A stretch of DNA of 64,000 bases, from the IMG/VR virus record IMGVR_UViG_3300022921_000002, positions 157,448-221,447 of that record; one strand, 5' to 3'. A program made the translations under genes and the position numbers. Shown here piece after piece: positions 8,223 to 26,372 of this stretch (positions are counted from its first letter, which is position 1; the number at the start of each line of letters is the position of its first letter). The notes under the pieces are model-generated. The model was given only the letters and a program-made list of their open reading frames with translations, was not told where the DNA came from and searched no databases.

Positions 8223-9076
8223 TTACTATAGAGCAATTTAGCGCTATGATCCCAACTAACAAAGATCCACAACCGTGGTTTGATGCGGCAGTGGAAAAGT
8301 TTGATGAATATAACATTAATACTCCAAATAGAATTGCAGGCTTTATGGCACAGTGTGCTCATGAGTCAGCAGACTTTACACGTTTAACTGAAAACCTTAA
8401 CTATTCGGAAAAAGCATTGAACTCGGTGTTTAGTCGCTATTTCGGAAAAGGAAAACGAAATGCTAAAGAATACGCTCGAAACCAGGAAAAGATTGCAAAC
8501 TATGTCTATCAAGACGAGTTTAGATCCAAGCGAGGAGCTTTGGGAAACACTGAACCCGGGGATGGCTGGCTATTTAGGGGTAGAGGTATCAAACAGCTTA
8601 CGGGCAGAAATAATTACGCGGCTTTTGGAAAGTCCGTTGGAATGTCAGCCGAGGAAGCTGCAGAATATGTAGCAACACCAAAAGGTGCTATTGAGTCAGC
8701 ATGCTGGTTCTGGGCATCTAATAAACTCGACAAATATGCCGATAATGGTGATAATGTGGGGTTGACAAAAAAGATTAATGGTGGTACAATTGGATTAGAT
8801 GACCGTAACCGTCGTTGGGAATCAGCCTTAGCCATCCTCGGTGGTGAAATGCCTGCACCTAAAAAAGCAGCACCTAAGAAAGCTGCAGGTGTGCGTACAC
8901 TACGCAAAGGTATGAAAGGTGATGACGTTGCTAAAATGCAAAAGGCAATTGGTGTAGGAGCTGATGGCGATTTTGGATTTGGAACTCTTACTGCTGTTAA
9001 AAAATGGCAAAAGATGAACGGATTGGTTGCAGATGGTATTGTAGGTCCTGCTACACAAGCAAAGATGTTTAAATAA
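8219..9076 (+). CDS. Endolysin, GH19 (chitinase-like) domain plus C-terminal peptidoglycan-binding domain
   Basis: AQCAHES, ENLNYS, FRGRGIKQLTGRNNY, INGGTIGLDDR; C-terminal LRKGMKGDDV...ADGIVGPAT. Confidence 0.9.
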   Translation: MITIEQFSAMIPTNKDPQPWFDAAVEKFDEYNINTPNRIAGFMAQCAHESADFTRLTENLNYSEKALNSVFSRYFGKGKRNAKEYARNQEKIANYVYQDEFRSKRGALGNTEPGDGWLFRGRGIKQLTGRNNYAAFGKSVGMSAEEAAEYVATPKGAIESACWFWASNKLDKYADNGDNVGLTKKINGGTIGLDDRNRRWESALAILGGEMPAPKKAAPKKAAGVRTLRKGMKGDDVAKMQKAIGVGADGDFGFGTLTAVKKWQKMNGLVADGIVGPATQAKMFK

Positions 9077-12400: not shown

Positions 12401-12551
12401 ATATTTTTATATACCGGAAAATGGTTTCTGGAATGATAAATATGAGTACCATGGCAATCTATGGTAAGAATAATCCCTATTAGCACAAAATATGCCACAT
12501 CCTCAAGGTGCGGTTTTTCTGTCCTTAACACATACGAAAGAGGTTCACCGA

Positions 12552-13826
12552 ATGTTTGACTCCCGAGCACTACCTAAAGATATAGTAAATTACGTTATTA
12601 AACGTGACGGATCAACAAAGAGTTTTGATTCAAGTAAGATTGCATATGCGGTTAATAATGCTATGAAAGCAATTGGTATTCGAGCAAAATCCTTACCTGG
12701 TGAAATTGCATTTGAAGTTACAAAAAGTATTAACGAAGATGCTGAGGATGTTATTGTTGATGTTGATACAGTACACAAAACAGTTGAGAACGTGATGATG
12801 GATATGGGATTACACGACTTAGCTCGTGAGTATATCCTTTTTCGTTTTAACAACCAACCTGACATTTTCCGTAAACGTACAAACCTTAAACCATATGAGT
12901 ATCCGCAACTCGTTGAGTATACTGATGCTATCCGACATTCATATTGGGTACATACCGAGTTTAATTATTCGTCCGATATCCAGGATATGAAAGTGCGTAT
13001 GACTGAGTCTGAGGTTGATATTGTTAAAAAAGCAATGCTTGCTATCTCACAAATTGAGGTACAGGTAAAAACATTTTGGGCAAAGATTGGTGATAAATTT
13101 CCTAAGCCTGAAGTACAAGGTGTTGGTGTAACATTTGGTGAATCAGAAGTACGCCATGCCGATGCCTATTCTAATCTCATTGAAATTATGGGTCTCAATG
13201 ATGAATTTGAAAAGGTTGTAGAAATTCCTGCAATGAAAAAACGCATTGCCTATCTTGAGCAATCAATTGCAGCACCTGTTGATAATAAGGATTACTTCCA
13301 TAAGATTATCCTATTCTCAATGTTTGTTGAAAACGTATCACTGTTTTCACAATTTCTAATTATGATGGCGTTTAATAAACATAGAAATTTACTTAAAGGT
13401 ATTTCTAATGCTGTTGAGGCAACATCAAAAGAAGAAGATATCCATGCTCGTTTCGGATTTGAGCTTGTAAACATTATCCGTGAAGAAAATCCTGATTGGT
13501 TTGACAAAGATAGTATTGCTGAAGTCAACCGCCTGTGCCGTGATGCATTTAAAGCAGAGTCTGCAATTGTTGATTGGATCTATGGTGATGCCGATCTCGA
13601 TTTTCTACCTAAAGCGACTGTCAAAGAATTCCTAAAGCATCGTTTCAATCAATCATTAAAGGCAATTGATATGAAGCCTTTATATGATGTTGACGAGGAA
13701 GCCGTAAAGAGTACTGATTGGTTTGTTGAAGAAATTTTGAGTACAAAGAATATTGACTTCTTTGTTAAACGCTCAACTGCATATTCAAAGAAAACCAAGG
13801 CATTCACCGAAGATGATTTATTTTAA
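12552..13826 (+). CDS. nrdB: Ribonucleotide reductase beta subunit with N-terminal ATP-cone (NrdBi / class Id-type)
   Basis: VIKRDG...FDSSKI ATP-cone; QIEVQVKTFW, ESEVRHADAY, FVENVSLFSQF and KEEDIH metal ligands. Confidence 0.9.
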   Translation: MFDSRALPKDIVNYVIKRDGSTKSFDSSKIAYAVNNAMKAIGIRAKSLPGEIAFEVTKSINEDAEDVIVDVDTVHKTVENVMMDMGLHDLAREYILFRFNNQPDIFRKRTNLKPYEYPQLVEYTDAIRHSYWVHTEFNYSSDIQDMKVRMTESEVDIVKKAMLAISQIEVQVKTFWAKIGDKFPKPEVQGVGVTFGESEVRHADAYSNLIEIMGLNDEFEKVVEIPAMKKRIAYLEQSIAAPVDNKDYFHKIILFSMFVENVSLFSQFLIMMAFNKHRNLLKGISNAVEATSKEEDIHARFGFELVNIIREENPDWFDKDSIAEVNRLCRDAFKAESAIVDWIYGDADLDFLPKATVKEFLKHRFNQSLKAIDMKPLYDVDEEAVKSTDWFVEEILSTKNIDFFVKRSTAYSKKTKAFTEDDLF

Positions 13827-13838
13827 AAGGAAAACACT

Positions 13839-15494
13839 ATGAGAGATTTTTATTGGCTAAACGAAGACTCAAGGACATTTTTATCAAGAGGTTATTTGAG
13901 TAAAGGTGAAACAGCTAAGCAACGAATTAGAGATATTGCTGATAAAGCTGAAGAGTACTTGGATATCAAAGGATTTAGTGACAAGTTTTATGGGTATATG
14001 AGTAAAGGTTATTATTCATTAGCGTCACCTGTGTGGGCAAATTATGGTAAAGAACGTGGTTTGCCTGTATCTTGTTTTGGATCATATATTGATGATAGTA
14101 TGCAATCAATTTTATTTGGGCATGCTGAAAATGGAATGCTAATGAAAAACGGTGGTGGCACGTCAGGTTACTTTGGTGCTGTCCGTGGGCGAGGTGCTGA
14201 AATCACAGATCAAGGTGAGTCGTCAGGTTCAGTACATTTTATGCAGATGTATGATACATTGGCATCAGTTGTATCACAAGGTTCTGTCCGTCGTGGTTTC
14301 TTTGCAGCATATCAAGATATTGAACACCCCGATGCTGATGAGTTCCTTGACATTGCAACAGAAGGTAATCCTATTCAAGGGTTAACAACAGGCATTACTG
14401 TTTCCGATAAGTTCATTAAAGAAATGAAAGATGGTGATCCACAGAAACGCGCATTGTGGGCAAAAGTTTTACAGCGCCGTTCTGAAGTTGGTTTTCCATA
14501 TATTCTGTATTCTGATAATGTAAACAATGGCCGTCCTGATGTTTATAAAGATAAGGATATGAAAGTACACGCATCTAATATGTGTGCTGAAATCGCATTA
14601 CCGTCAAGCGCCGAAGAAACATTTACTTGTGTTCTATCATCACTAAATTTATTACATTGGGATGAGATTAAAGAAACCGATGCAATTGAAACTTTGGTTA
14701 TGTTCCTTGATACTGTATGTCAAGAATTCATTAATAAGACTGAAGGTCAAATTTATATGAAACGTGCTCGTGACTTTGCTATGAACCATCGGGCATTAGG
14801 TGCAGGTGTACTAGGTTGGCATTCCTATTTGCAATCAAAGATGATTGCTTTTGAATCAAAAGAAGCAGCACAGCTCAATGTTGAAATTGCTAAAACATTC
14901 CATGATAGATCATACGCGGCATCTGCTGAACTTGCGGACAAACTTGGTGAACCACCTTTGCTAAAAGGTTATGGCCGTCGTAATTCAACAACAATGGCAA
15001 TTGCTCCGACTAAATCATCAAGCTTTATTTTAGGCCAAGTATCACAATCAATTGAACCTGAGTTTAGTAACTGTTATGTTAAAGACTTGGCAAAAATGAA
15101 AGTGACAATTAAGAACCCGTATCTTTTGAAACTGTTAAAGAAAAAAGATCAGGATAAATCAGAGGTTTGGGAATCAATTCGTAATGCTGATGGATCAGTA
15201 CAACATTTGATCTTTTTGTCTGAGGAAGAAAAAGAAGTATTCAAAACATTCTCAGAAATCAATCCATACACAATTATTGACCAGGCTGCTATTCGTCAAC
15301 AGTATATTGACCAATCACAAAGTTTAAACTTGATGCTTGATCCTGACCTTTCAGTTAAAGAAATCAATGCGTTGTACCTATATGCTCATGAGATGGGTGT
15401 TAAAAGTTTGTATTATAGTTATTCTATGTCAGCAGCACAATCATTAACACGGAAACGAGTTTCATCAATGGAGTGCGCAGCCTGCGAAGCATAA
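13839..15494 (+). CDS. nrdA: Ribonucleotide reductase alpha subunit, short, no ATP-cone (NrdAi-type)
   Basis: PVSCF, SNMCAEI, TCVLSS, AIAPTKSSS, KSLYY and C-terminal CAACEA. Confidence 0.95.
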   Translation: MRDFYWLNEDSRTFLSRGYLSKGETAKQRIRDIADKAEEYLDIKGFSDKFYGYMSKGYYSLASPVWANYGKERGLPVSCFGSYIDDSMQSILFGHAENGMLMKNGGGTSGYFGAVRGRGAEITDQGESSGSVHFMQMYDTLASVVSQGSVRRGFFAAYQDIEHPDADEFLDIATEGNPIQGLTTGITVSDKFIKEMKDGDPQKRALWAKVLQRRSEVGFPYILYSDNVNNGRPDVYKDKDMKVHASNMCAEIALPSSAEETFTCVLSSLNLLHWDEIKETDAIETLVMFLDTVCQEFINKTEGQIYMKRARDFAMNHRALGAGVLGWHSYLQSKMIAFESKEAAQLNVEIAKTFHDRSYAASAELADKLGEPPLLKGYGRRNSTTMAIAPTKSSSFILGQVSQSIEPEFSNCYVKDLAKMKVTIKNPYLLKLLKKKDQDKSEVWESIRNADGSVQHLIFLSEEEKEVFKTFSEINPYTIIDQAAIRQQYIDQSQSLNLMLDPDLSVKEINALYLYAHEMGVKSLYYSYSMSAAQSLTRKRVSSMECAACEA

Positions 15495-15497
15495 ATT

Positions 15498-16694
15498 ATG
15501 GAATATATGAAATTTTTTAAAGACACGGTTGCATCATTTAGAAGCGACGGAAGATATCGAGTATTTAATGATATTATCCGTGAAAAGGGTCAGTTTCCTA
15601 GGGCTATTTGGTATGGGAAATATGCACCAAAGAATATTGTTAATTGGTGCTCAAATGATTATTTGGGTATGGGTCAAAACCAATATGTCATAGATGCTAT
15701 GCATACTGCATTAGATCAAACAGGTTCAGGTTCCGGCGGTACGAGAAATATCGGCGGAACCTCAGTTTTCCATGTAACACTTGAACGTGAAATTGCAACA
15801 CTACACCAACGTGAAAACGCATTACTGTTTAGTAGTGCATACGTTGCCAATGAGTGGGCTCTAATTGCTCTTTCACGCATCATCCCAAACATTTGCTTTA
15901 TATCTGATAATAAAAACCATGCCTCAATCATTATGGGAGTAAAGCACAGCCGTGCACCTAAAATGATTTTTAAGCATAATGATATGGCAGATCTCGAGAA
16001 ATGTTTAAAGGCAGCAAAAAAGAATAAGCAAATTCCTTGCGTATTGTTTGAGTCCGTATATTCAATGGACGGTGATGTTGCGCCTATTAAAGAAATCGTT
16101 GAGTTATCACATAAATATAACGCAATGACTTATATAGATGAAGTCCATGCGGTTGGTTTGTATGGTCCTACAGGTGCAGGTTATTGTGAACATTTAAATT
16201 TATATTCCGATGATATTGATATTATCAACGGCACGTTAGGAAAAGCATATGGGGTACAAGGCGGGTATATTTCAGGTAAGCAAGAAGTTATTGATGCGAT
16301 TAGATTGGTTGCATCAGGGTTCATATTCACCACCTCCATGTCACCTGTTATATGTGCTGGGGCACTCGCCAGTATAAAATATCTCAAAGACCATTCTTGT
16401 CTAAGAGATCAACAACAAGAACGAGTAAAAAAGCTCAGACAAATGTTAGAAGAAGCAGGATTGAATATACATCCTAATGCTTGTACTCACATTATCCCAG
16501 TAATGATTAATGATGCCTTTAAATGTAAAGAAGCATCGGATAGATTACTAAACGAATTCGGTATATACATTCAACCGATTAATTCACCAACAGTAGAGGC
16601 AGGTACCGAAAGGTTACGTATTGCTCCTACACCATACCATACCGATTTGATGATGGTGGAATTAGTCGAAGCGCTGAAAGAAGTATTGAAATGA
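15498..16694 (+). CDS. hemA: 5-aminolevulinate synthase (PLP-dependent, Shemin pathway)
   Basis: [52 protein letters not shown] (PLP Lys), [20 protein letters not shown]. Confidence 0.92.
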
Positions 16695-16735
16695 ATCAAT
16701 TAGAAAATGCCTTCTTCAGTAAAAAGGAAAAAACT

Positions 16736-17155
16736 ATGAGTAAAGTAAAAAAGGCATTTTGGTTTTGCCTAGGAATTATTTTGGTAGGTGTGGCATATCT
16801 TGGTGTATTACTACCCGGTCTACCTTGGTCAACACCAATTCTAGGTGCAACATTCTGTTTTGCCAAATCAAGTGACAGACTGCATAATTGGATTATGAAT
16901 CATCCACGGTTCGGTCCATTTGTTAAAAACTGGGGTACATACCGTGTATATCCAACAGCGGCTAAATGGTTGATGGTTGCCGTAATGAGTACATCCTTGG
17001 CATTTATGTGGTTTGGTACAGGAAACGAAAAAGCAACATTATATCTGTTTATTACTTTTGCCTTAATTGTTACGTGGGCGTGGCGTTATCCAGGATCACA
17101 AGAAATTGCCGAAAAAAGAATTGCCGAAGGTAAAAAGATTGGTTGGCTAAAGTAA
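16736..17155 (+). CDS. YbaN/DUF454 family inner membrane protein
   Basis: LGVLLPGLPWSTPILGATFCFAKSSDRLHNWIMNHPRFGPFVKNW matches the DUF454 pattern. Confidence 0.8.
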   Translation: MSKVKKAFWFCLGIILVGVAYLGVLLPGLPWSTPILGATFCFAKSSDRLHNWIMNHPRFGPFVKNWGTYRVYPTAAKWLMVAVMSTSLAFMWFGTGNEKATLYLFITFALIVTWAWRYPGSQEIAEKRIAEGKKIGWLK

Positions 17156-17165
17156 ATAAATAAGA

Positions 17166-17360
17166 ATGGATCGCTGCAAAAAACAACACATTTTATTTGA
17201 AAAAATTAGTAATGGATCTTACAAAGCGATAGATACATGGTGTGGCAATGTGTTAGAAGATGAAACAGTTTGGTATTGCAGTGATGAATGTATGGAAAAA
17301 GGTGAAGAAGGAAAGCCTTTAAAATACAAGAAAGATTATAATGAAATAAGCATTGACTGA
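17166..17360 (+). CDS. Hypothetical small Cys-containing protein
   Basis: ORF fills the gap; WCG...YCSDEC. Confidence 0.4.
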   Translation: MDRCKKQHILFEKISNGSYKAIDTWCGNVLEDETVWYCSDECMEKGEEGKPLKYKKDYNEISID

Positions 17361-17371
17361 GGAGTTATACT

Positions 17372-18394
17372 ATGAAGCGAATACTAATCACTGGTGGCGG
17401 TGGATTTATTGCTCACCATTTAATTAACCAGGTACTTATCCGAACAGACTGGGAAATTGTAACACTTGATCGGTTAGATTACAGTGGCAATCTCAATCGA
17501 CTCCATGATTTACTTCAGGACCGAACTCCTGCCGAACGTAAACGTGTACGGACAATCTTCCATGATTTAAAAGCAGAAATCAACCCAATGCTTGAAGCAG
17601 ACATTGGTAAGGTTGATATTATTGCTCACCTTGCCGCAGGTTCCCACGTTGACCGTTCAATCGAGCGTCCTATGGAATTTGTCATGGACAATGTAGTGGG
17701 TACAGCTAATCTTTTAGATTATGGCCGTAGGCAGGATAACCTTGAAAGGTTCTTATACTTTTCAACTGATGAAGTATTCGGCCCTGCACCTGATGGTATT
17801 AAGTATGACGAGTACGACCGTTATAATTGTACTAATCCTTACTCAGCATCTAAAGCTGGTGCTGAGGAATTGGCTGTTGCATACCAAAATACTTATAATA
17901 TGCCAATCTATATTACGCATACTATGAACGTATTTGGACAACGGCAACATCCTGAAAAGTTTATTCCAATGACTATTAGGAATGTTCGAGATGGCGGTAT
18001 GGTAACTATTCACAGTGATGAAACAAAAACAATTCCAGGATCACGCCATTACATCCATGCTGAAGATGTAGCTGATGCAACAATGTTCTTATTGGAACAC
18101 AACCGCACATTGGATATGACAAACAACACAGGAATTAAATGCCCTAAGTTTAATATCTGTGGTGCTACGGAATTAAACAATTTGGAACTTGCACAGCTTA
18201 TCGCTGATTCCCAAGGAAAGGAATTGAATTATCAATTTATGGATTTCCACAGTAGCCGTCCTGGTCACGATCTTCGATATGCACTCAGCGGTGATAGAAT
18301 GGCGAATATGGGATGGACACCTCAACCTGTTGAGAAAAGACTTGATGAAGTAGTACATTGGACATTAGAAAATAAAAGGTGGCTTGACATATGA
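17372..18394 (+). CDS. NDP-sugar 4,6-dehydratase (RmlB-like extended SDR)
   Basis: ITGGGGFIA, HLAAGSHVDRSI, STDEVFG, YSASKA, RPGHDLRY. Confidence 0.9.
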   Translation: MKRILITGGGGFIAHHLINQVLIRTDWEIVTLDRLDYSGNLNRLHDLLQDRTPAERKRVRTIFHDLKAEINPMLEADIGKVDIIAHLAAGSHVDRSIERPMEFVMDNVVGTANLLDYGRRQDNLERFLYFSTDEVFGPAPDGIKYDEYDRYNCTNPYSASKAGAEELAVAYQNTYNMPIYITHTMNVFGQRQHPEKFIPMTIRNVRDGGMVTIHSDETKTIPGSRHYIHAEDVADATMFLLEHNRTLDMTNNTGIKCPKFNICGATELNNLELAQLIADSQGKELNYQFMDFHSSRPGHDLRYALSGDRMANMGWTPQPVEKRLDEVVHWTLENKRWLDI

Positions 18395-18954
18395 ATTGGG
18401 AAACATTTATAGAACAGAACTATGAGCATGCTTGCAATACAAAAACTGATATTGATGAGCATCTGCCAATCCTAAGAGCATTAGGTGACCAATGCGACCA
18501 TATTACAGAAATGGGTGTTAGGTTTGGTGCAAGTTCAAAAGCATTCTTATGCTGTGACGTAACACTTATTTCATATGATATTGAATATAACGAACAAGTA
18601 AATAGATTATTTGAAATTGCAAAAGATGCTGGTAAATCGGTTGAGTACATTATTCAAGATGTTCTCAAAACAGAAATTGTACCAACTGACTTGTTGTTTA
18701 TTGATACATGGCACTCAAACGAGCAATTGAGACAAGAACTTGCATTGCACGGAAATCAAGCACAGAAATTTCTAGTGTTCCATGATACACAAACTTATGG
18801 TCTTCAAGATGAAAGTTGGAATAAGATTAAACCGAGTGAACCGGGGTGTGGTTTGTTACCTGCCATTATTGATTTTATAATTGAAAATCCGCATTGGCAA
18901 TTCCATACACACCGAACAAATTGTAATGGACTGACTGTATTAGAGAGAAGATAA
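18391..18954 (+). CDS. Class I SAM-dependent methyltransferase-like protein
   Basis: TEMGVRFGAS, DLLFIDTWH, LVFHDT. Confidence 0.65.
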   Translation: MNWETFIEQNYEHACNTKTDIDEHLPILRALGDQCDHITEMGVRFGASSKAFLCCDVTLISYDIEYNEQVNRLFEIAKDAGKSVEYIIQDVLKTEIVPTDLLFIDTWHSNEQLRQELALHGNQAQKFLVFHDTQTYGLQDESWNKIKPSEPGCGLLPAIIDFIIENPHWQFHTHRTNCNGLTVLERR

Positions 18955-20501
18955 TGATTGTAGATTGCTTTCCGTTTTTTGCACCGACAAATGAAGAAAT
19001 ACTATATTTAAGAGTTAACCTACTCAAAGATGTTGTTGATAAATTTATTATTGTTGAAAGTAACAAAACTCATAGTGGTGAACCTGTTGAGCGTCGGTTC
19101 CTTGAGATTGCTCGTAATCAAGGTTTGCCGATGGAAAAGATCATTTATATTGAGCATGATATTCCTGAAACTGAAGATTTAAAAACATTAGCAATTGATA
19201 GAGTAAACGCAGGTACTAATAAAAATAATATTGATTCATTATATGCAAGAGTACGTGAGCGTTTACAAAAAGATGCTTGTATCAATGCTTTTAATCAATT
19301 TAATGATGATGACGTTTTTATCTATGGTGATGCCGATGAGATTATCAATCCTCAGCATGTGGAATGGTTAGCAAACCTGTGCCGCGCCAATACATCCGTG
19401 ATTTTAAAAATACCTCTTGTTTATTTACAAGGTCGTGCAGATCTGCGTGTCCATCACCGCAATGGTCAACCGCTTATTTGGATGCGTGCTATGTTCTTTG
19501 CAACAAAGGGACAGATATGGAAAAATGGTGGTTTTAATAATATTCGTTGTGGTAATATGCAGGATGATGTTAGATTTCCTATTCAAGATGGTAAAGTCAT
19601 ACAGGATCTTGGGTGGCATTTGGCATGGATGGGAACAAACGACCAACGTAATAAAAAAGCACGTTCATTTGCTCATGCCTTTGATAAATTCCAATGGATG
19701 AAGAAACAAGATGATTTTGTGAACGGTGGATACGAAAAACATTTCAATAGCAATGATCCAGTTGAAGGTGGTATTGCACCTGATGGAAATCCTGGGCATA
19801 TATTGAAAAGATATCCTCTCGATAAATTACCAAAAATGCTACTTGATACTCCATACCTTAGTAAATTCTTTTTACCTGAAGTTGATATAATGAAAGAGTT
19901 TACGTTTAATCACTGTGTTTGTTATTGGTGCCAAAAATTGGATTGGCCTTTGATGTATGATCTTGACGGCGATGGTAAAAAGACATGGTTTGAAATACCA
20001 CGGAGTTGTTCTGTCACAGTAAAAGAAAGTCATCCTAACCGCAAGCAAGTTAGCCAGGATGATCCTGAGTACAAAAATGCAAAAAAACCACTCATTATAT
20101 TTACAGAACCCGTTGAAAGGTTTTTGTCTTGTATGAACGTATATCTTGTACCAGGTCAACGGTATTACGATTATGGTAAAGATATTTTTAAATCATTTGA
20201 TGTTAATCTTGAAGATTGTACCAAACAAGAAAAGATTGATTATTTCTTTACACATTTAAATAAGGTGTGTTCTTATCATCAAGTACACCATTTCCATCCG
20301 CAAGTTAGATTTATTGATTTTGAAACATTTGATGAGTTTACGGTTATCAACAAACACGAAACAAGTAATTATCTTGGAACTGACCGTGTAATGAATAAAA
20401 CAACAAAAGAAATAAATGAAAGCGATTTAACCAAAGATCAACTTGACTTCATACGTTGGGTTTATCGAGAAGATTACGAGTTCTTTAAAAATTATGGCTA
20501 A
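18954..20501 (+). CDS. GT17-like glycosyltransferase fused to a C-terminal sulfotransferase-like domain
   Basis: IVDCFPFF, IVESNKTHSG, RERLQKD, GDADEI, GWHLAWMG (GT17); FEIPRSCSVT, EPVERFLS, HFHPQ, VYREDYEFF (Sulfotransfer_2-like). Confidence 0.7.
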   Translation: MIVDCFPFFAPTNEEILYLRVNLLKDVVDKFIIVESNKTHSGEPVERRFLEIARNQGLPMEKIIYIEHDIPETEDLKTLAIDRVNAGTNKNNIDSLYARVRERLQKDACINAFNQFNDDDVFIYGDADEIINPQHVEWLANLCRANTSVILKIPLVYLQGRADLRVHHRNGQPLIWMRAMFFATKGQIWKNGGFNNIRCGNMQDDVRFPIQDGKVIQDLGWHLAWMGTNDQRNKKARSFAHAFDKFQWMKKQDDFVNGGYEKHFNSNDPVEGGIAPDGNPGHILKRYPLDKLPKMLLDTPYLSKFFLPEVDIMKEFTFNHCVCYWCQKLDWPLMYDLDGDGKKTWFEIPRSCSVTVKESHPNRKQVSQDDPEYKNAKKPLIIFTEPVERFLSCMNVYLVPGQRYYDYGKDIFKSFDVNLEDCTKQEKIDYFFTHLNKVCSYHQVHHFHPQVRFIDFETFDEFTVINKHETSNYLGTDRVMNKTTKEINESDLTKDQLDFIRWVYREDYEFFKNYG

Positions 20502-20727
20502 AAGAGATAACAGCGCAAAAGTAATTCAAAAATTACAATATGACATTGACCAGGAAAAAAAGCAAAAGGCAATATATCGTAAAGAGATTGATGAGCTTCG
20601 GCAACAAAAGATGATGTTATTTGAAACAATGGTTGCACTTGTGGATGACGATACATATTGGTCAGATGATGCTAAACAGTCTGGTATTATAAACCGTTTG
20701 AAAAAAGTGCTACAACAAACCAAATAA
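20494..20727 (+). CDS. Hypothetical coiled-coil protein
   Basis: ORF coupled to the upstream gene. Confidence 0.45.
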   Translation: MAKRDNSAKVIQKLQYDIDQEKKQKAIYRKEIDELRQQKMMLFETMVALVDDDTYWSDDAKQSGIINRLKKVLQQTK

Positions 20728-20770
20728 CTATTGACATTACTAATAGAATCAGTTTATATTAGAATCATAA
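20725..20770 (+). promoter_or_regulatory. Early sigma70-type promoter element
   Basis: TTGACA 20731, 18 nt, TATATT 20755; GAATC at 20746 and 20762. Confidence 0.75.
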
Positions 20771-20792
20771 TAAATATAAACTTGAGGTAGTA

Positions 20793-21329
20793 ATGTTAAA
20801 TTTTGTCAAAAATACACCGATCGCAGTAACACAATCTGTTATCCGAATAATCCTTGTTCTAGGACTTGTAGTTGCTGCTAGCACAAGCCAAGCAGAAGCA
20901 CAACGGATTGTTGGATTTAATCCATTAGAATTCCCTGAAGAGCACTGTCTTGCCTTAAATATTTACTACGAAGCACGAGGTAGTAACCTGGCAGATAAAG
21001 CAGCTGTTGCTGATGTTGTTATAAATCGTATGAATGATACACGTTACCCAAATACAATTTGTGGTGTAGTACAAGACGGTTATGTTAAAGGTCGCCGTGA
21101 TTGCCAGTTTAGCTGGTACTGTGACGGAAAATCTGATGTTCCCATAGATCTTGACCGTTGGTCAGAAGCACAGAATATTGCGTTTGCAATGACAAAATGG
21201 AGTGAGTTCCGTGGCATCAGTGAAGGTGCAACTCATTACCATGCCGATTATGTACGTCCTTATTGGGCTTCAAGTCTACAACTTGTTGGTACAATCGGCC
21301 GTCACGTTTTTTACCGGTGGAATAAATAA
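20793..21329 (+). CDS. Cell wall hydrolase (SleB / Hydrolase_2 family) with signal or TM segment
   Basis: CLALNIYYEARG, VINR, PNTICGVV, CQFSWYCDG, GATHYHADYVRPYW, IGRHVFY. Confidence 0.9.
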   Translation: MLNFVKNTPIAVTQSVIRIILVLGLVVAASTSQAEAQRIVGFNPLEFPEEHCLALNIYYEARGSNLADKAAVADVVINRMNDTRYPNTICGVVQDGYVKGRRDCQFSWYCDGKSDVPIDLDRWSEAQNIAFAMTKWSEFRGISEGATHYHADYVRPYWASSLQLVGTIGRHVFYRWNK

Positions 21330-21460
21330 ATGATTGAAATAGTCGGAATATTCCGTGAAGAAGTAATTAAGAAAACATTCAAATGCCCTTTAGATGCAGG
21401 TGAGTTTAAAGATTTTCTTGATGCACAATACCCAATTAAAGTAATATGGAGGAAGATATA

Positions 21461-21772
21461 ATGTCAGAAGAAAGATACGTTGTTGTTACATCAGTTTCTC
21501 AATTTAGAATACGGCATGCTATTCCAATGAGTAAATTACAAGAACTCAATCCTGATATGCCTGTTGATCCCAAATGGGCTGAAGATACTGTTGTAATGAA
21601 TGAAGTAAAAGAATTTTCACAAACTCATCTTGGTGATACTATTATGGATACGTTTGTTCTTGATGAAGAAAGAGTACTTCAACTGTTTGACCGTGATAAT
21701 GATTATCTATCAGAATGGGATACAGAAAAGAAATTAAACTGGATCCATGATTGGAAGGAAAAACCACTGTGA
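21461..21772 (+). CDS. Hypothetical protein
   Basis: GGAGG upstream; intact ORF. Confidence 0.55.
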   Translation: MSEERYVVVTSVSQFRIRHAIPMSKLQELNPDMPVDPKWAEDTVVMNEVKEFSQTHLGDTIMDTFVLDEERVLQLFDRDNDYLSEWDTEKKLNWIHDWKEKPL

Positions 21773-21966
21773 CCCATTCCGTCGAAGAACTATATGAAAA
21801 GATAAATGTATTATATAACAAAGGAATAGAATTACACCGTGAAAGGTACCGTGTAGCAGGCAGTTATGATGAAATACAATGTCAGTATATGGTTGACGAT
21901 ATAAAAGCATTGGCACGCGAGATTGAACATGGTCCTATTGATTTAAATAGAGATTTTAGTAAGTAA
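21769..21966 (+). CDS. Hypothetical protein
   Basis: GTGA overlap with the upstream stop. Confidence 0.45.
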   Translation: MTHSVEELYEKINVLYNKGIELHRERYRVAGSYDEIQCQYMVDDIKALAREIEHGPIDLNRDFSK

Positions 21967-21967
21967 A

Positions 21968-22285
21968 ATGGAACATAAAGAATTAACACCTGACTGTTGG
22001 GTGGTAATAAGATCAAATAATACAGAGCCTCCGCATTATAGATTGCTTGTAGGTTTTGAAGAAAAAGATGAATATAAAGTTAGCACAAAGATTGAATCCT
22101 GTGAAGCTGTACAGAAAGATTATGTGTTTACAACCGACAAGGTAAAATATTTTTGTAATGACAAGAACCGTGGTTTAAGACCAGTTATTAACCACGTATA
22201 TCTTTCAATGGTTGACTCAAGTCAGCATGACATAACATTAGTCAGAAACGATGAGTATTTCTCACTACTACATTATATGGAATAA
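21968..22285 (+). CDS. Hypothetical protein
   Basis: Tightly packed ORF; TPDCWVVI N-terminal motif. Confidence 0.5.
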   Translation: MEHKELTPDCWVVIRSNNTEPPHYRLLVGFEEKDEYKVSTKIESCEAVQKDYVFTTDKVKYFCNDKNRGLRPVINHVYLSMVDSSQHDITLVRNDEYFSLLHYME

Positions 22286-22288
22286 AAT

Positions 22289-23056
22289 ATGAAAATTTTG
22301 ATATGCGGCCATGGTTTCGTTGGTAAGGCTCACGGGTTATTTTTATCATCACACCATGATATTAAAGTGTATGATCCACAATTGGGTTATAAAGATACTA
22401 CAGTATTTAATGATGCTGACGCAGTTATTATTGCCGTTTCCACTCCCGAAGGTGAAGATGGTCAATGCGATATGTCAAATGTGTATGACACAATCGAGCG
22501 CATTATGCCAGGAACACCTGTTCTTATAAAATCAACGGTCAGTCTTGAAGGTTGGCGGTTGATTAACCGTGCCTATCCAAATGAATTTATTACCTTTTCT
22601 CCCGAATACCTCCGAGCAGATTATGCTATGGAAGATTTTAAAAATCAAAAAAGTATAGCTGTAGGTGGCGGTGATGTTAATTTATGGGTTGGTATATTAT
22701 CAGAATCATTAGAAATACGTGTTGATATTATGAACCCCGAGGTACTTATTTTAAACAAGTATTTTAGAAATGCGTTTTTGGCAATGAAAGTTGCCTTCTT
22801 TGAACAGATGTATGATATGGCGATTACGTCAGGTGTTGATCCGCACGAATTATTGGCAACTGTTTCAGATGATAAACGTATTGGTAAAAGTCATACATAT
22901 ATTAATACAAATGACCGAGGTTTCGGTGGTCATTGTTTCCCAAAAGATACATCAGCTTTATTGGCAACAGGCCATCAAATGGGTTACGACTTGTCCATCT
23001 TATCCGAGGCAATGCAATACAATGAAAGGTTGCGAAATGAGAAAAATAATATATGA
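22289..23056 (+). CDS. UDP-glucose/GDP-mannose dehydrogenase family protein (short form)
   Basis: GHGFVG, AVSTP, IKSTV, FSPEYLR, KYFRNAFLAMKV, GFGGHCFPKD. Confidence 0.85.
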   Translation: MKILICGHGFVGKAHGLFLSSHHDIKVYDPQLGYKDTTVFNDADAVIIAVSTPEGEDGQCDMSNVYDTIERIMPGTPVLIKSTVSLEGWRLINRAYPNEFITFSPEYLRADYAMEDFKNQKSIAVGGGDVNLWVGILSESLEIRVDIMNPEVLILNKYFRNAFLAMKVAFFEQMYDMAITSGVDPHELLATVSDDKRIGKSHTYINTNDRGFGGHCFPKDTSALLATGHQMGYDLSILSEAMQYNERLRNEKNNI

Positions 23057-23246
23057 CAATATCTGCGAAGTCGTAAGTACACGGACCGATGTTATAGTTG
23101 AAGCTGAAGCCGATAATATGAGACCAGGAGTTTCATTTGAAGCATATGTAGCAAACAATAAAATTAAAATGAAATGGAACGGCAAGATTTACGTTGGTAA
23201 TGTGTCAGGTATGGAATTTACATCAACAGGACCTAAAGAACTATGA
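23037..23246 (+). CDS. Hypothetical protein
   Basis: AAAGG upstream; ends in ATGA overlap with the next gene. Confidence 0.5.
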   Translation: MRKIIYDNICEVVSTRTDVIVEAEADNMRPGVSFEAYVANNKIKMKWNGKIYVGNVSGMEFTSTGPKEL

Positions 23247-23650
23247 AGGTGGGGTTTACTGCATCGGCATTTGATTTACTCCACGCAGGACACGTTCAAA
23301 TGTTAAGAGATGCAAGAGAACAATGTGACTTTTTGATATGCGGATTGCAAATTGATCCGACATTAGACCGAGCCGATAAGAATGCTCCTGTGCAAAATAT
23401 AGTTGAAAGATATACACAATTAAAAGCAATTAGTTACGTTGATGAGATCATTCCGTATTTGACAGAATCAGATCTTTGTGATATATTATCAATGTACCAC
23501 ATAGATGTTCGTATTCTAGGTGTTGAGTACAAAGAAAAAGATTTCACAGGTAAAGACATATGCCGCAAACGTGGCATTGATTTATATTTTAATAAACGAG
23601 ATCACCGTTTTAGTACAAGTGATTTAAGAAGGAGAGTTTGTAATGACTGA
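23243..23650 (+). CDS. Cytidylyltransferase (TagD / glycerol-3-phosphate cytidylyltransferase-like)
   Basis: SAFDLLHAGHV, YVDEIIPY, RDHRFSTSDLR. Confidence 0.85.
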   Translation: MKVGFTASAFDLLHAGHVQMLRDAREQCDFLICGLQIDPTLDRADKNAPVQNIVERYTQLKAISYVDEIIPYLTESDLCDILSMYHIDVRILGVEYKEKDFTGKDICRKRGIDLYFNKRDHRFSTSDLRRRVCND

Positions 23651-23822
23651 TGGACCATTTAAAGCGGCATTTGATGCAGATACTACCGGCGTAGTGCATC
23701 GTGAGATTATAACCTATCGTATGAAGAACGGTATGATGGTAAAAGAAACCGCATGCCGTGATTACTATAAATCTGGTGATTACCATGATAGCATATCAAC
23801 ACAACCGTTGGTGCAACGATGA
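23643..23822 (+). CDS. Hypothetical small protein (59 aa)
   Basis: Manually translated MTDGPFKAAFDAD...QPLVQR; AGGAG RBS; fills the gap. Confidence 0.5.
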   Translation: MTDGPFKAAFDADTTGVVHREIITYRMKNGMMVKETACRDYYKSGDYHDSISTQPLVQR

Positions 23823-24001
23823 GTGATGAGCAATGGCAAATAGATTCTGATATGCTGATTCAACTTCATAATACCGCAAGGATTATGGAACAATCCGATA
23901 ATACGGCAGGTAATGAACTCCGACAAATTGCCGACCGTTTTAGTACACTAATTAAAAATGCACATAGTCGAAGACATTGGTGCAATGGGAATGAGAAATA
24001 A
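23819..24001 (+). CDS. Hypothetical protein
   Basis: ATGA-coupled ORF. Confidence 0.45.
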   Translation: MSDEQWQIDSDMLIQLHNTARIMEQSDNTAGNELRQIADRFSTLIKNAHSRRHWCNGNEK

Positions 24002-24166
24002 TGTTTAAATTGTTTAAATCTAATACAGACGCAGAAATTGATTTTGGGCAAGATGTATCAATGGTACCACAGATTGAAATAGTACCTGAGCCATCATTAT
24101 CAGATATGCTCAAATTGGTTGAAGAACGTCTTGACCGTATTGAAAGTAAAATTGACAAACTACTCA

Positions 24167-25537
24167 ATGAGTAAGGTTTGGTTAGGTATAAGTGAAGGCT
24201 TCCATGATGCCGGTGTAAGTATGATTTGGAACGGGCAAATATTGTCGGCAACTCATGCTGAACGGTTTAGTCGTAAAAAGAATGACCGTTGGGTTCATCC
24301 TATGCAGTATCCGCAAGGTATTAATAACGGATATGATAAGATTGCTTTTTATGAAAAACCTTGGTTGAAAACAACGCGTCAGCTATGGGCAGGTCAAGGT
24401 TTAAAACCAAAACGTACTAAATACAACAAGTCATTCCATCACCATGAGTCTCATGCTGCCGCAGGGTTTTATACTTCAAAGTTTGATTCCTGTAATATTT
24501 TAGTTATTGATGCAATTGGTGAATGGGATACTGTTTCCGTTTGGAAAGCATGGACGAAGAACGGTATACCAAAAATGATTAAATTAAAATCATATAAGTA
24601 TCCGTTTTCAGTGGGTTTGTTTTATTCAGCAATTACTAAATCAATTAAATTGAAGCCACAGGAAGATGAATATATTACCATGGGTATGGCAGCATACGGC
24701 GAGCCAATTTATACCGATGAGCTCAAAGAAATAATGCTACACAAAAATTGCCATAAAGGAATAGCGCAATTTCAATATGCAAAAGATGAAGATATTGCGG
24801 CATCAGCACAAAAGGTTGTTGAAGATTTCATTATTGAAATGGTAAAAGATTATTGCCCACACGAAAACCTGATTATGATGGGTGGTGTGGCATTGAATTG
24901 TGTTGCGAATACAAAGGTTGCTGAACTTGGTAAAAACATTTGGATTATGCCAAATCCTGGTGATTGTGGATCTTCATTAGGTGCTGCGGCACTAGGTTAT
25001 GGAAAGAAATTGATATGGGAAGATCCATATCTTGGAACGGAGATTAAAAATGAAGTACAAATTAGTGGCGTTGTTCAGCATCTTATTGATAATTCCTATT
25101 GCGGTATTGCGAATGGCCGCGCTGAGTTTGGCCCTCGTGCCCTTGGCAATCGTAGCCTTATCGCTGACCCTCGACGAGATGTTAAAGATACCGTTAACGA
25201 AATTAAACGTAGACAAAAATTTCGACCCTTTGCACCTGCGATCCTGGAAGAATTTGCTAATGAATATTTCCAAGGACCAATGAATGAGTATATGCAATTT
25301 GTGGCGCAAGCCAAACACGACTATAAATCTGTAACCCACGTTGATGGTTCAGCACGTGTTCAAATTGTAAAACCAAACTGTAAATCTATATTACGCCCAA
25401 TACTTGAGGAATGGTATGAAAAGACAGGTTGTCCAATGTTATTGAATACGAGTTTAAATATTAAAGGTCAACCGATGGTTGATACTTGGGAACACGCATT
25501 AGAATTTGAAAAGAAATATAATGTTAAAGTCTTCTAA
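24167..25537 (+). CDS. O-carbamoyltransferase (NodU/CmcH/TobZ family)
   Basis: GFHDAG, ERFSRKKND, HHESHAAAG, IDAIGE, EYITMGMAAYG, GGVALNCVAN, EFGPRALGNRS, RPFAP, HVDGSARVQ, LLNTSLN. Confidence 0.92.
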   Translation: MSKVWLGISEGFHDAGVSMIWNGQILSATHAERFSRKKNDRWVHPMQYPQGINNGYDKIAFYEKPWLKTTRQLWAGQGLKPKRTKYNKSFHHHESHAAAGFYTSKFDSCNILVIDAIGEWDTVSVWKAWTKNGIPKMIKLKSYKYPFSVGLFYSAITKSIKLKPQEDEYITMGMAAYGEPIYTDELKEIMLHKNCHKGIAQFQYAKDEDIAASAQKVVEDFIIEMVKDYCPHENLIMMGGVALNCVANTKVAELGKNIWIMPNPGDCGSSLGAAALGYGKKLIWEDPYLGTEIKNEVQISGVVQHLIDNSYCGIANGRAEFGPRALGNRSLIADPRRDVKDTVNEIKRRQKFRPFAPAILEEFANEYFQGPMNEYMQFVAQAKHDYKSVTHVDGSARVQIVKPNCKSILRPILEEWYEKTGCPMLLNTSLNIKGQPMVDTWEHALEFEKKYNVKVF

Positions 25538-26372
25538 ATATATTCTTGCAACAGGCTGCAGTTATACGGATTTAGAATATCGTTCTCCTCATTATGACAT
25601 TAAACCATGGCCTATGTGGCCTGAACTTGTTGGTGACTATTTAAGTTTGCCTGTTAAAAATATTGCAAAGTGCGGTGCAGGAAATGATTTTATGTTGGAT
25701 CAACTTATTCCTATAATTGCAAAAGATCATATGAATATTGATTGCGTTATGATACAATGGTCGGCAATAGACCGATGGTCAGTTTATAGTGATGATATAT
25801 TTTTAAATAACCCAAAATCTGATATTCAAAATGAGAATACACAAGATCCTCATAAGTTGGTTAGTAAAGAACGGGCAGGATATTATGAGCGTTTAGAATA
25901 TTCAAAATATTTAATGAAAAGAATTAATGCTAAAGGAACTATAACACTTGTACAGTTATTCTTTCAGCAATGTTTGACTATTGAAAGATTATGCCGTGCG
26001 CTTGGGATCAAATGCGTACACCTACAAGCATGTGGTCATATAGGTTTAAGTTATGTAAACTCTGCATTAAAAATAATGGGTGAAAAATTTACTTCACACG
26101 AGCAACATATGGAATGGATGAAACAAGTAAGTTCATTACCTGAATACAAAGAATTGTATAATGAAAAAACTACAATGATTAACTTTCCCAAAACAAGTTC
26201 TATTCCTTTAGTAAAAGTATCGGATGATCCAATATATTGGTCAGTACAGCACTTGTTTAATTCAAACCGAGATAAATATCGCATCGGACCATTAGATAGT
26301 CATCCTTCTGAAGATGGTCAGAATTTGATGGCTGAAATGTTTTACTTGAAATATAATGAGGTTTATGGATAA
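25521..26372 (+). CDS. SGNH/GDSL hydrolase-like protein, paralogue 1
   Basis: LATGCSYT, WP, NIAKCGAGND, DSHP. Confidence 0.6.
   Translation: MLKSSKYILATGCSYTDLEYRSPHYDIKPWPMWPELVGDYLSLPVKNIAKCGAGNDFMLDQLIPIIAKDHMNIDCVMIQWSAIDRWSVYSDDIFLNNPKSDIQNENTQDPHKLVSKERAGYYERLEYSKYLMKRINAKGTITLVQLFFQQCLTIERLCRALGIKCVHLQACGHIGLSYVNSALKIMGEKFTSHEQHMEWMKQVSSLPEYKELYNEKTTMINFPKTSSIPLVKVSDDPIYWSVQHLFNSNRDKYRIGPLDSHPSEDGQNLMAEMFYLKYNEVYG

What the first reader, a model, noticed from the sequence alone, without database searches (positions are those of the whole stretch)
15498..17155. hemA-ybaN tetrapyrrole/iron module directly behind the RNR genes
Seen: an intact ALA synthase starts 3 nt after nrdA and is followed by a DUF454/YbaN membrane protein. 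Known: ALAS makes the committed precursor of haem, cobalamin and bacteriochlorophyll, and among bacteria is largely alphaproteobacterial; YbaN-family genes often lie near iron/haem uptake genes. Inference: an auxiliary metabolic module that boosts tetrapyrrole flux during infection, and a functional clue for YbaN.
Basis: partly seen in the sequence, partly recalled or inferred. Interest (0 to 1): 0.6.

Follow-up and report, generated by a model that had tools for sequence, protein, structure and literature searches.

The report
Phage ALA synthase with DUF454 partner
A large T4-like marine phage carries a 5-aminolevulinate synthase gene, a kind of phage helper gene first published in 2024, and it is almost always paired with a small membrane protein of unknown function (DUF454/YbaN), a pairing I found nowhere in the literature I could search and the strongest gene-neighbourhood clue found here to what that family does.

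Summary
Window 15498-16694 is an intact 398-aa ORF that starts 3 nt after the nrdA stop. A DUF454 ORF at 16691-17155 overlaps its stop codon (ATGA).

The enzyme is an ALA synthase, not Kbl, BioF or SPT. It scores 559 bits on TIGR01821 (cut-off 338.55). All other oxoamine-synthase models fall below their cut-offs, and every catalytic residue of Rhodobacter ALAS is kept.

The window is the last 64 kb of a 221-kb T4-like phage genome. That genome also encodes hemO and a pcyX-like bilin reductase 28 kb upstream.

Phage ALAS ('valaS') was described and shown to be active by Wegner et al. 2024 (PMC11480375), so that part is known. Their text and supplements never mention DUF454.

The pairing is conserved:
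- 38 of 55 ALAS-centred and 67 of 80 DUF454-centred IMG/VR loci carry both genes.
- There are 65 distinct pairs, 38 overlapping or no more than 25 nt apart.
- The pairing survives an RNR-class swap, insertions, an inversion and a relocation as DUF454-valaS-pcyX.
- None of 80 alphaproteobacterial ALAS loci carries DUF454.

Best reading: a feedback-insensitive vAlaS plus a four-helix inner-membrane partner acting in the same tetrapyrrole/iron process. The partner's biochemical role is inferred, not shown.

The parts
12492..13826 (+). nrdB, the class I RNR small subunit, with an N-terminal ATP-cone. It is the first gene of the tightly packed run nrdB-nrdA-valaS-DUF454.
   Evidence: Pfam Ribonuc_red_sm at 1.3e-56 plus ATP-cone at 3.3e-14.
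13839..15494 (+). nrdA, the class I RNR large subunit without an ATP-cone. Its stop lies 3 nt before the valaS start.
   Evidence: TIGR02510 at 782.6 bits against a cut-off of 602; sequence at the junction.
15498..16694 (+). valaS, the phage 5-aminolevulinate synthase (398 aa, P0001).
   Evidence: TIGR01821 at 559 bits against a cut-off of 338.55, with Kbl, BioF and SPT models all below their cut-offs. The best solved structures are ALAS 7x98 and 2bwn, at 432 and 404 bits, against 217 bits for Kbl. Catalytic residues are kept and the haem-feedback residues are absent. It groups with phage ALAS.
16691..17155 (+). DUF454/YbaN-family inner-membrane protein (154 aa, P0002; alternative start at 16736 gives 139 aa). 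It is the conserved partner of valaS.
   Evidence: PF04304 at 94.3 bits against a cut-off of 35.1. The AlphaFold2 model has pLDDT 92.7, with four long hydrophobic helices and two amphipathic helices. Linkage to ALAS is shown. Purifying selection: median dN/dS 0.21.
17166..17360 (+). Small Cys-containing ORF (64 aa) marking the variable downstream boundary of the pair. It is present in L001 and absent in L002 and L003.
   Evidence: No family match. Presence and absence among near-identical contigs. Assembly breaks at 17129-17163 in three runs.
17372..18394 (+). Nucleotide-sugar epimerase, the first gene of a sugar-modification block. It is the conserved right-hand flank and not part of the tetrapyrrole pair.
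   Evidence: phrog_540 at 7e-98. Further sugar genes lie downstream.

Best explanation
The window belongs to a 221-kb T4-like phage from salt-marsh and seawater samples. ORF 15498-16694 encodes a phage 5-aminolevulinate synthase (vAlaS). It condenses glycine and succinyl-CoA into ALA, the committed tetrapyrrole precursor, and it lacks the two residues that mediate haem feedback in Rhodobacter ALAS, so it should run unregulated in the infected cell. It lies in one tight gene run with the RNR genes; co-transcription is inferred. The overlapping downstream gene encodes a DUF454/YbaN-family protein. By the positive-inside rule it is an N-in/C-in four-helix inner-membrane protein whose conserved residues (Trp67, His71, Gly75, Trp81, Lys92) lie in amphipathic helices at the cytoplasmic face. 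It also has a conserved basic C-terminal tail not covered by the Pfam DUF454 domain model. This protein is a selected partner of vAlaS in this phage lineage. The most likely role, which is inferred, is in the same tetrapyrrole/iron process at the inner membrane, where the last haem-synthesis steps and iron insertion occur. It might bind or hand over haem, porphyrin or iron so that extra ALA becomes usable haem instead of toxic free porphyrin. The same genome also encodes haem oxygenase and a bilin reductase, so the phage supplies the entry step and two exit steps of haem metabolism and leaves the middle steps to the host. Shown here: gene identities, phage origin and conserved linkage. Shown elsewhere for a homologue: ALAS activity. 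Inferred: unregulated activity, co-transcription and any DUF454 biochemistry.
For: Phage origin:
- Major head, scaffold, portal, sheath and terminase genes are present.
- G000 is a 221,447-bp virus record that CheckV rates 100% complete.

ALAS identity:
- TIGR01821 scores 559 bits against a cut-off of 338.55, and the rival families fall below theirs.
- ALAS structures are the top matches.
- R. capsulatus K248, H142, D214, H217, R21, N54, T83, S189, T365 and R374 are all conserved. H342 is replaced by Lys and the C-terminal Cys400 is missing.
- A phage homologue complements an E. coli ALA auxotroph, and its K250A mutant does not (PMC11480375).

Linkage:
- DUF454 is present in 38 of 55 ALAS-centred viral loci; 10 of the 17 without it have less than 2.4 kb of downstream flank.
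- ALAS lies within 6 kb in 67 of 80 DUF454-centred loci, or 50 of 61 distinct genes.
- There are 65 distinct pairs, 38 overlapping or no more than 25 nt apart. Divergence of the two proteins is correlated (Spearman 0.86).
- The pair persists where the upstream RNR is a different class, where 0.9-2.3 kb of other cargo is inserted, where DUF454 is inverted next to a ferritin gene, and where the order is DUF454-valaS-pcyX with 4-nt overlaps beside tail genes.
- In one complete 201-kb genome the two genes are unlinked but both present.
- None of 80 alphaproteobacterial ALAS loci has DUF454 within 5 kb.
- Phage ALAS forms one branch with SH-aLRT 100.

DUF454 protein:
- Median dN/dS is 0.21.
- The structure model has pLDDT 92.7, and conserved positions are listed.

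Iron/haem context:
- hemO and pcyX are in the same genome.
- E. coli ybaN is in a Fur iModulon and has a predicted Fur site cluster.
- DUF454 is induced by iron starvation in Avibacterium.
- It co-occurs with T11SS/haem-oxygenase loci in 118 of 1111 cases.
- A DUF454-TonB_C fusion cluster exists.
Against: - No biochemical datum exists for any DUF454 protein.
- The viral loci are relatives with conserved synteny, so the raw counts overstate independence. The argument rests on about six kinds of rearrangement event, not on 65 independent events.
- 11 of 61 distinct phage DUF454 genes have no ALAS within 6 kb. Seven ALAS loci with at least 2.5 kb downstream lack DUF454, although all these records are fragments.
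- Neighbours of the 30 best-scoring DUF454 genes, from a sample of 301 Pseudomonadota genomes, are housekeeping genes, not haem or iron genes.
- The complex prediction gave no answer.
- There is no solved-structure match.
- Presence in RNA-labelled runs does not prove transcription.
Confidence: 0.6

Rival explanations
1. DUF454 is functionally unrelated to ALAS, for example a general membrane-remodelling, exclusion or transport protein. The adjacency would only reflect shared ancestry of a syntenic block (primase, thymidylate synthase, RNR, ALAS, DUF454, epimerase) in one phage lineage.
For: Most paired loci share the same flanking genes. 11 of 61 distinct DUF454 genes lack a nearby ALAS. The DUF454 C-terminal tail is equally conserved in copies with and without adjacent ALAS. 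Bacterial DUF454 neighbours are housekeeping genes.
Against: The pair survives events that broke other linkages: a swap of RNR class, insertion of varied cargo, inversion, an allele swap (ALAS 98% but DUF454 80% identical in L004 and L005), and relocation with reversed order next to pcyX and tail genes. 38 of 65 pairs overlap or lie within 25 nt. In a complete genome where the two genes are unlinked, both are still present.
Confidence: 0.25
2. DUF454 physically docks vAlaS to the inner membrane through its conserved cytoplasmic tail or amphipathic helices. ALA synthesis would then be placed beside the membrane-associated late haem enzymes.
For: The stop and start codons overlap, which fits stoichiometric co-production. 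The conserved surface is predicted to face the cytoplasm. The phage clade has a conserved tail beyond the Pfam domain.
Against: There is no positive evidence of contact. The tail is just as conserved in DUF454 copies that are not next to ALAS. ALA is a soluble intermediate, and the next enzymes are cytosolic (general knowledge of the pathway).
Confidence: 0.12
3. The enzyme is another alpha-oxoamine synthase (Kbl, BioF, SPT or CqsA-like) and does not make ALA.
For: It shares the fold and PLP chemistry with these families, which give secondary hits of 200-320 bits.
Against: Only TIGR01821 exceeds its curated cut-off; Kbl scores 320 against 460, BioF 319 against 426, and SPT 242 or less against 500 or more. 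ALAS structures score about twice as high as Kbl. ALAS-specific substrate residues are conserved. It sits in a clade one of whose members was shown to make ALA.
Confidence: 0.02

Closest known systems
Viral ALA synthase (valaS/vAlaS) of aquatic phages, Wegner et al. 2024, Nat Commun (PMC11480375)
   Same: It is a phage-encoded Shemin-pathway ALAS from T4-like aquatic phages that groups apart from bacterial ALAS. Its catalytic residues are kept and the haem-feedback residues His342 and Cys400 are missing. hemO and a bilin reductase are in the same genome.
   Different: Here valaS lies directly behind the RNR genes, 28 kb from hemO-pcyX, and not in the three-gene cassette. It is paired with a DUF454 gene that the paper's text and 11 supplements never mention. 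The activity of this particular enzyme has not been tested.
Rhodobacter capsulatus ALAS (PDB 2bwn) and alphaproteobacterial HemA/HemT
   Same: It has the same family, length, PLP lysine and substrate-binding residues, and is 51-56% identical to diverse alphaproteobacterial ALAS.
   Different: There is no haem-sensing His342 or Cys400. It is encoded by a phage. Bacterial ALAS loci show no DUF454 neighbour in 80 loci examined.
E. coli YbaN (DUF454, PF04304)
   Same: It has the same Pfam domain and a small multi-helix inner-membrane architecture. The family has regulatory links to iron through Fur.
   Different: It scores only 63.8 bits on the YbaN equivalog model, whose cut-off is 163, so it is a family member and not an orthologue. 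The phage clade adds a conserved basic C-terminal tail. The gene context is ALAS rather than priC-apt-dnaX.
Cyanophage haem-catabolic AMGs (ho1/hemO with pebS, pcyA or pcyX)
   Same: The same genome carries hemO and a Fe_bilin_red gene. In three related contigs pcyX directly follows valaS.
   Different: Those genes act after haem. The pair in the finding acts at, or is linked to, the first committed step.
TspO, the tryptophan-rich tetrapyrrole-binding membrane protein (analogy only, from general knowledge)
   Same: It is a small helical membrane protein with conserved Trp residues that is functionally tied to porphyrin handling.
   Different: No sequence or fold relationship was found. Porphyrin binding by DUF454 is untested.

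Membership tests
5-aminolevulinate synthase (EC 2.3.1.37; NCBIfam TIGR01821) | Scores above the curated equivalog cut-off while sister oxoamine-synthase models do not | tested here: met
   559.3 bits against 338.55. Kbl, BioF, SPT and CqsA models are all below their cut-offs.
5-aminolevulinate synthase (EC 2.3.1.37; NCBIfam TIGR01821) | PLP Schiff-base lysine and PLP-binding His, Asp and His (R. capsulatus K248, H142, D214, H217) | tested here: met
   These correspond to K249, H141, D214 and H217 in P0001, by alignment to 2bwn. All are invariant in 10 phage ALAS.
5-aminolevulinate synthase (EC 2.3.1.37; NCBIfam TIGR01821) | Glycine and succinyl-CoA binding residues (R21, N54, T83, S189, T365, R374) | tested here: met
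   All are conserved in the alignment to 2bwn.
5-aminolevulinate synthase (EC 2.3.1.37; NCBIfam TIGR01821) | [quoted passage not shown] | not testable with these tools
   This was shown for the CB_2 phage homologue by complementation and lysate assay (PMC11480375), not for this protein.
Viral AlaS clade (Wegner et al. 2024) | Groups with phage ALAS, separate from bacterial ALAS | tested here: met
   74 phage sequences against 80 alphaproteobacterial sequences form one split with SH-aLRT 100. The tree is unrooted and the bacterial sample is the 80 sequences most similar to the phage ones.
Viral AlaS clade (Wegner et al. 2024) | Loss of the haem-feedback residues His342 and Cys400 | tested here: met
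   Position 342 is Lys. The protein ends at residue 398 with no C-terminal Cys.
hemO-pcyA/X-valaS three-gene cassette | The three genes are adjacent | tested here: not met
   hemO and pcyX lie at G000 143997-145454 and valaS at about 172945, 28 kb apart. No hemO or pcyX lies within 6 kb of ALAS in the 55 ALAS-centred loci.
DUF454 / YbaN family (Pfam PF04304) | Domain match above the gathering threshold over the full model | tested here: met
   94.3 bits against 35.1, model positions 1-114 of 115.
DUF454 / YbaN family (Pfam PF04304) | Orthologue of E. coli YbaN (NCBIfam NF007818 equivalog) | tested here: not met
   63.8 bits against a cut-off of 163.
DUF454 / YbaN family (Pfam PF04304) | Small polytopic inner-membrane protein | tested here: inconclusive
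   The AlphaFold2 model (pLDDT 92.7) has hydrophobic helices at 18-40, 47-60, 89-109 and 113-131. The topology comes from the positive-inside rule only, with no experimental or dedicated predictor result.

The most novel reading that the evidence does not exclude
DUF454/YbaN is a dedicated inner-membrane component of tetrapyrrole/iron metabolism, for example a haem-, porphyrin- or iron-handling protein acting at the cytoplasmic face. It occurs in about a third of the sampled Pseudomonadota genomes and has no known function. Phages co-opted it as the obligatory partner of an unregulated ALA synthase, so that extra ALA ends up as haem or bilin and not as phototoxic porphyrin. The phage pairing would then be the first handle on the function of this widespread orphan family.
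Probability: 0.35. Interest if true: 0.7.

Novelty: new variant of a known kind. Interest (0 to 1): 0.45.

Why it matters
Phage ALAS itself is already published, so this copy only adds a new genomic setting: behind the RNR genes in a complete 221-kb genome that also has hemO and pcyX.

The added value is the partner. DUF454/YbaN occurs in 107 of 301 sampled Pseudomonadota genomes and is Fur-regulated in E. coli, yet it has no assigned function. A gene pairing that phages preserve through several rearrangements points to a concrete and cheap experiment: co-express vAlaS with and without DUF454 and measure porphyrin and haem.

If DUF454 proves to handle tetrapyrroles or iron, that would assign a function to an orphan family. 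It would also refine the model of how marine phages rewire host haem metabolism, supplying the entry step, a membrane factor and the exit steps.

Tried and rejected
- Complex prediction of vAlaS with DUF454 returned no answer, with score 0.00 and controls not run. It is not evidence either way.
- Foldseek against the PDB gave nothing at E <= 0.001. The top rows were oestrogen-receptor helices at TM about 0.2, which is noise.
- PHROGs had no family for either protein.
- GenBank phages (INPHARED) had no ALAS, only Kbl and BioF hits below 38% identity, mostly in contaminated or transducing records. Their only DUF454 hits were in bacterial-like records.
- Contexts of three distant DUF454 representatives were contigs too short to be informative.
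- Promoter and terminator scans around the genes did not exceed the shuffle expectation, with 27 promoter-like sites against 26.9 expected, and no terminator separates nrdA, valaS and DUF454.
- The hypothesis that the pair was inherited as a bacterial operon was rejected: none of 80 alphaproteobacterial ALAS loci has DUF454, and in the four genomes among five checked with the Pfam model that carry DUF454, the gene lies outside the ALAS locus.
- The hypothesis that bacterial DUF454 generally sits by haem or iron genes was not borne out in 30 sampled loci.
- Searching five DUF454-less valaS records for a distant DUF454 found none, but all are only 3-28% complete.
- One call failed on a size limit and was corrected.
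Full report
**Observation.** The ORF table and translations show four close-packed genes on the + strand:
- an NrdB with an N-terminal ATP-cone, 12492-13826;
- a cone-less NrdA, 13839-15494;
- a 398-aa ORF, 15498-16694;
- a 154-aa ORF, 16691-17155.

The nrdA TAA stop ends at 15494 and the next ATG is at 15498. The fourth ORF's ATG overlaps the third's TGA as ATGA. Pfam gives Aminotran_1_2 at 4.9e-65 for the 398-aa protein and DUF454 at 6.4e-27, 94.3 bits against 35.1, for the 154-aa protein. The one caveat is that the DUF454 start could be the internal ATG at 16736, which has an AAGGAA 8 nt upstream and is the start used by the more distant homologues.

**What the window is.** PHROG scans find a T4-type major head protein, scaffold, portal, tail sheath and large terminase on the minus strand at 49-59 kb. 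On the plus strand they find a 1753-aa tail fibre, primase, thymidylate synthase, DNA ligase and endolysin. The window is the last 64 kb of a 221,447-bp IMG/VR virus record that CheckV rates 100% complete. The nearest cultured relatives by capsid protein are only 62-68% identical. They are Sinorhizobium phiM12/phiN3-like phages, cyanomyoviruses and the OM43 phage Melnitz, so the host is unknown. Near-identical DNA occurs in salt-marsh and seawater metagenomes.

**The enzyme.**
- NCBIfam TIGR01821 (5-aminolevulinate synthase) scores 559.3 bits against a curated cut-off of 338.55. Every sister model falls below its cut-off: Kbl 320 against 460, BioF 319 against 426, SPT 242 or less against 500 or more, CqsA 152 against 428.
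- Against solved structures, the top matches are bacterial ALAS 7x98 (432 bits) and R. capsulatus ALAS 2bwn (404 bits), then human and yeast ALAS. Kbl follows at 217 bits.
- In the 2bwn alignment the Schiff-base lysine (K248; K249 here), H142, D214, H217, R21, N54, T83, S189, T365 and R374 are all conserved. The haem-feedback residue H342 is Lys, and the protein ends at residue 398 without the C-terminal Cys400.

**Prior knowledge.** Wegner et al. 2024 (Nat Commun, PMC11480375) already reported 'valaS' in marine and freshwater T4-like phage contigs.
- They found it alone or with hemO and pcyA/X.
- They showed that phage ALAS groups apart from bacterial ALAS and noted loss of His342 and Cys400.
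- They showed that a freshwater phage enzyme complements an E. coli ALA auxotroph and makes ALA in lysate.

My tree agrees: 74 phage ALAS separate from 80 alphaproteobacterial ALAS on one branch with SH-aLRT 100. The best bacterial identities are 51-56% and spread over many alphaproteobacterial orders, so no donor can be named. The same genome carries a haem oxygenase (G000 143997-144536) and a Fe_bilin_red/pcyX gene (144771-145454), 28 kb upstream of valaS and outside the window. It has no ferrochelatase or ferritin and only one DUF454. The ALAS half of the finding is therefore a new member of a published kind.

**The partner.** Neither the main text nor the 11 held supplements of that paper mention DUF454 or YbaN. 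Only nine papers in the library mention DUF454 at all.

The protein scores 63.8 bits on the E. coli YbaN equivalog model, whose cut-off is 163, so it is a family member and not an orthologue. An AlphaFold2 model built on 127 sequences has pLDDT 92.7, with these helices:
- 18-40, 47-60, 89-109 and 113-131, which are hydrophobic;
- 62-70 and 74-84, which are amphipathic;
- 137-145, a short tail helix.

Across the wider family the best-conserved positions are G28, G38, P42, P45, A53, F57, S61, W67, H71 (87%), G75, W81 and K92. By the positive-inside rule (my inference), both termini and the 59-92 segment carrying most conserved polar and aromatic residues face the cytoplasm. The phage clade adds a conserved basic C-terminal tail beyond the Pfam domain. 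The fold has no match among solved structures. In the ESM Atlas it matches viral DUF454 clusters and a bacterial cluster in which DUF454 is fused to TonB C-terminal domains. Median pairwise dN/dS among 79 distinct phage copies is 0.21, with dS near saturation, so the gene is under purifying selection.

**Linkage.**
- From the ALAS side, 55 IMG/VR loci carry ALAS at 62-100% identity, and 38 of them have DUF454 in the fetched flank. Of the 17 without it, 10 have less than 2.4 kb of downstream sequence.
- From the DUF454 side, at least 572 IMG/VR stretches encode a relative. Of the best 80, 67 have ALAS within 6 kb, or 50 of 61 distinct genes.
- Together there are 65 distinct pairs. In 35 the order is ALAS then DUF454, overlapping or no more than 25 nt apart. 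In 25 the genes are on the same strand but further apart. Two are on opposite strands. Three have the order DUF454 then ALAS, overlapping.
- The identities of the two proteins to the window copies are correlated (Spearman 0.86).

These loci are relatives, so the counts are not independent. The argument rests on what the pair survives:
- (i) The upstream RNR is replaced by a different class (NrdA only 20-23% or 33-37% identical) while ALAS-DUF454 stays.
- (ii) Insertions of 0.9-2.3 kb between the two genes carry different cargo: a 2OG-Fe(II) oxygenase, or an alternative oxidase with a ClpP-like protease.
- (iii) DUF454 is inverted and sits beside a ferritin-like gene and a radical-SAM gene.
- (iv) An allele swap leaves ALAS 98% but DUF454 only 80% identical to the window (L004 and L005).
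- (v) The pair is relocated and reversed in order, as DUF454-valaS-pcyX with 4-nt overlaps, between sugar genes and a gp15-type tail gene (L189, L190, L214).
- (vi) In a complete 201-kb genome with terminal repeats the two genes lie about 35 kb apart, but both are present, along with hemO.

The pairing was not inherited from a bacterial operon. None of 80 alphaproteobacterial ALAS loci has DUF454 within 5 kb. In the four genomes among five checked with the Pfam model that carry DUF454, the gene lies outside the fetched ALAS locus; in the one genome where both positions are on the same chromosome they are about 3 Mb apart.

**What bacteria say about DUF454.** The family is common, present in 107 of 301 sampled Pseudomonadota genomes. 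The immediate neighbours of the 30 best-scoring copies are dnaX, apt, priC and assorted housekeeping genes, with no haem or iron family among the 25 most frequent. The iron link is regulatory and partial:
- E. coli ybaN is listed in a Fur iModulon (PMC10164565).
- It has a predicted Fur-site cluster in the priC-ybaN intergenic region (PMC2189734).
- A DUF454 gene is induced by iron starvation in Avibacterium (PMC7970244).
- DUF454 co-occurs with 118 of 1111 cluster-1 T11SS loci, alongside TonB and haem oxygenase (bioRxiv 2024.09.26.615229).
- A DUF454-TonB_C fusion cluster exists.

The phage context is a much sharper clue than any of these.

**Mechanism.** What is shown is an ALAS with an intact active site and no haem-feedback site, encoded immediately behind the RNR genes, with no detectable terminator between them, and coupled by an overlapping stop and start to DUF454.

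What is inferred is the rest. In the infected cell vAlaS would make ALA regardless of haem level. Host enzymes would carry ALA to protoporphyrin and haem. The phage HemO and PcyX would act on haem. DUF454, sitting in the inner membrane with its conserved face towards the cytoplasm, would act where protoporphyrinogen oxidase and ferrochelatase work and where iron arrives. The role I think most likely is binding or hand-over of haem, porphyrin or iron, so that unregulated ALA supply does not end as free phototoxic porphyrin, especially under iron scarcity.

My probabilities:
- about 0.9 that the enzyme is an active ALAS;
- about 0.6 that DUF454 is functionally coupled to it;
- about 0.25 for the specific ligand-handling role.

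Direct docking of vAlaS by DUF454 is a weaker alternative.

**Expression.** Six runs labelled as salt-marsh metatranscriptomes hold the stretch. In one, a single 4.9-kb contig spans 12400-17158, from nrdB through DUF454. In others a contig spans 15704-17158 or 15704-17163. Contigs cannot show strand or transcript ends, and DNA carry-over is not excluded, so this is only compatible with expression. The recurrent assembly break at 17129-17163 coincides with a strain-level presence/absence of the 64-aa ORF downstream.

**Verdict.** The phage context and the AMG reading are supported by the literature. The DUF454 pairing is real, conserved and, as far as the searchable literature shows, undescribed. 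It is best filed as a new variant, a two-gene valaS-DUF454 unit, of the known phage tetrapyrrole gene set.

Noticed in passing
window 12492-15494: The RNR has its ATP-cone on the small subunit (NrdB, cone at residues 34-118), and the large subunit is a short, cone-less TIGR02510 type. From memory, this resembles the NrdB-cone RNRs described in Flavobacteriia. The annotated NrdB ORF may really start at an internal Met (residue 21). In related phages the same slot holds an RNR of another class (NrdA 20-37% identical).
   Followed up: partly
G000 143997-145454 (outside the window, about 28 kb upstream of valaS); L056/L057: The same phage genome has a haem oxygenase (179 aa) and a Fe_bilin_red/pcyX-like reductase (227 aa), separated by a 55-aa ORF and followed by an unannotated 219-aa ORF and a T4-type late-transcription coactivator.
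   Followed up: partly
window 1038-4301 and 17372-28000: There is a large sugar-nucleotide/glycan block: a 1087-aa cytidylyltransferase-domain protein, a nucleotide-sugar epimerase, a GT17-like 515-aa protein, a UDP-glucose/GDP-mannose dehydrogenase, a NodU/Nol-like carbamoyltransferase and a phosphomannomutase. It suggests modification of a surface glycan or of DNA.
   Followed up: no
window 17166-17360: A 64-aa Cys-containing ORF with no family match is present in the window and in L001 but absent from the 98-99% identical contigs L002 and L003. Assembly contigs in three RNA-labelled runs break exactly here (17129-17163).
   Followed up: partly
L004/L005 7193-8688: These contigs are 98-99% identical to the window in nrdB, nrdA, ALAS and downstream genes, but their DUF454 is only 80% identical and about 1 kb is inserted after it. 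This looks like a local recombination hotspot where DUF454 was swapped and not lost.
   Followed up: partly
L055 7183-8895; L037 7172-9466; L030 7188-8614: The cargo found between or beside ALAS and DUF454 in other phages is largely iron-protein related: ferritin-like plus radical SAM (L055), alternative oxidase plus ClpP-like protease (L037), and 2OG-Fe(II) oxygenase (L030).
   Followed up: partly
ESM Atlas cluster, not in the window: A bacterial (Pseudomonadota) cluster of 367-aa proteins fuses DUF454 to TonB C-terminal domains. This is a domain-fusion hint that DUF454 can serve in TonB-type energy transduction or uptake systems.
   Followed up: no
window 38528-43789: A 1753-aa tail-fibre-like ORF has three stretches matching phrog_9729.
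   Followed up: no
window 20793-21329 and 8219-9076: There are two separate cell-wall hydrolase genes: a Hydrolase_2 (SleB-like) domain protein and a phrog_181 endolysin with a C-terminal binding domain.
   Followed up: no
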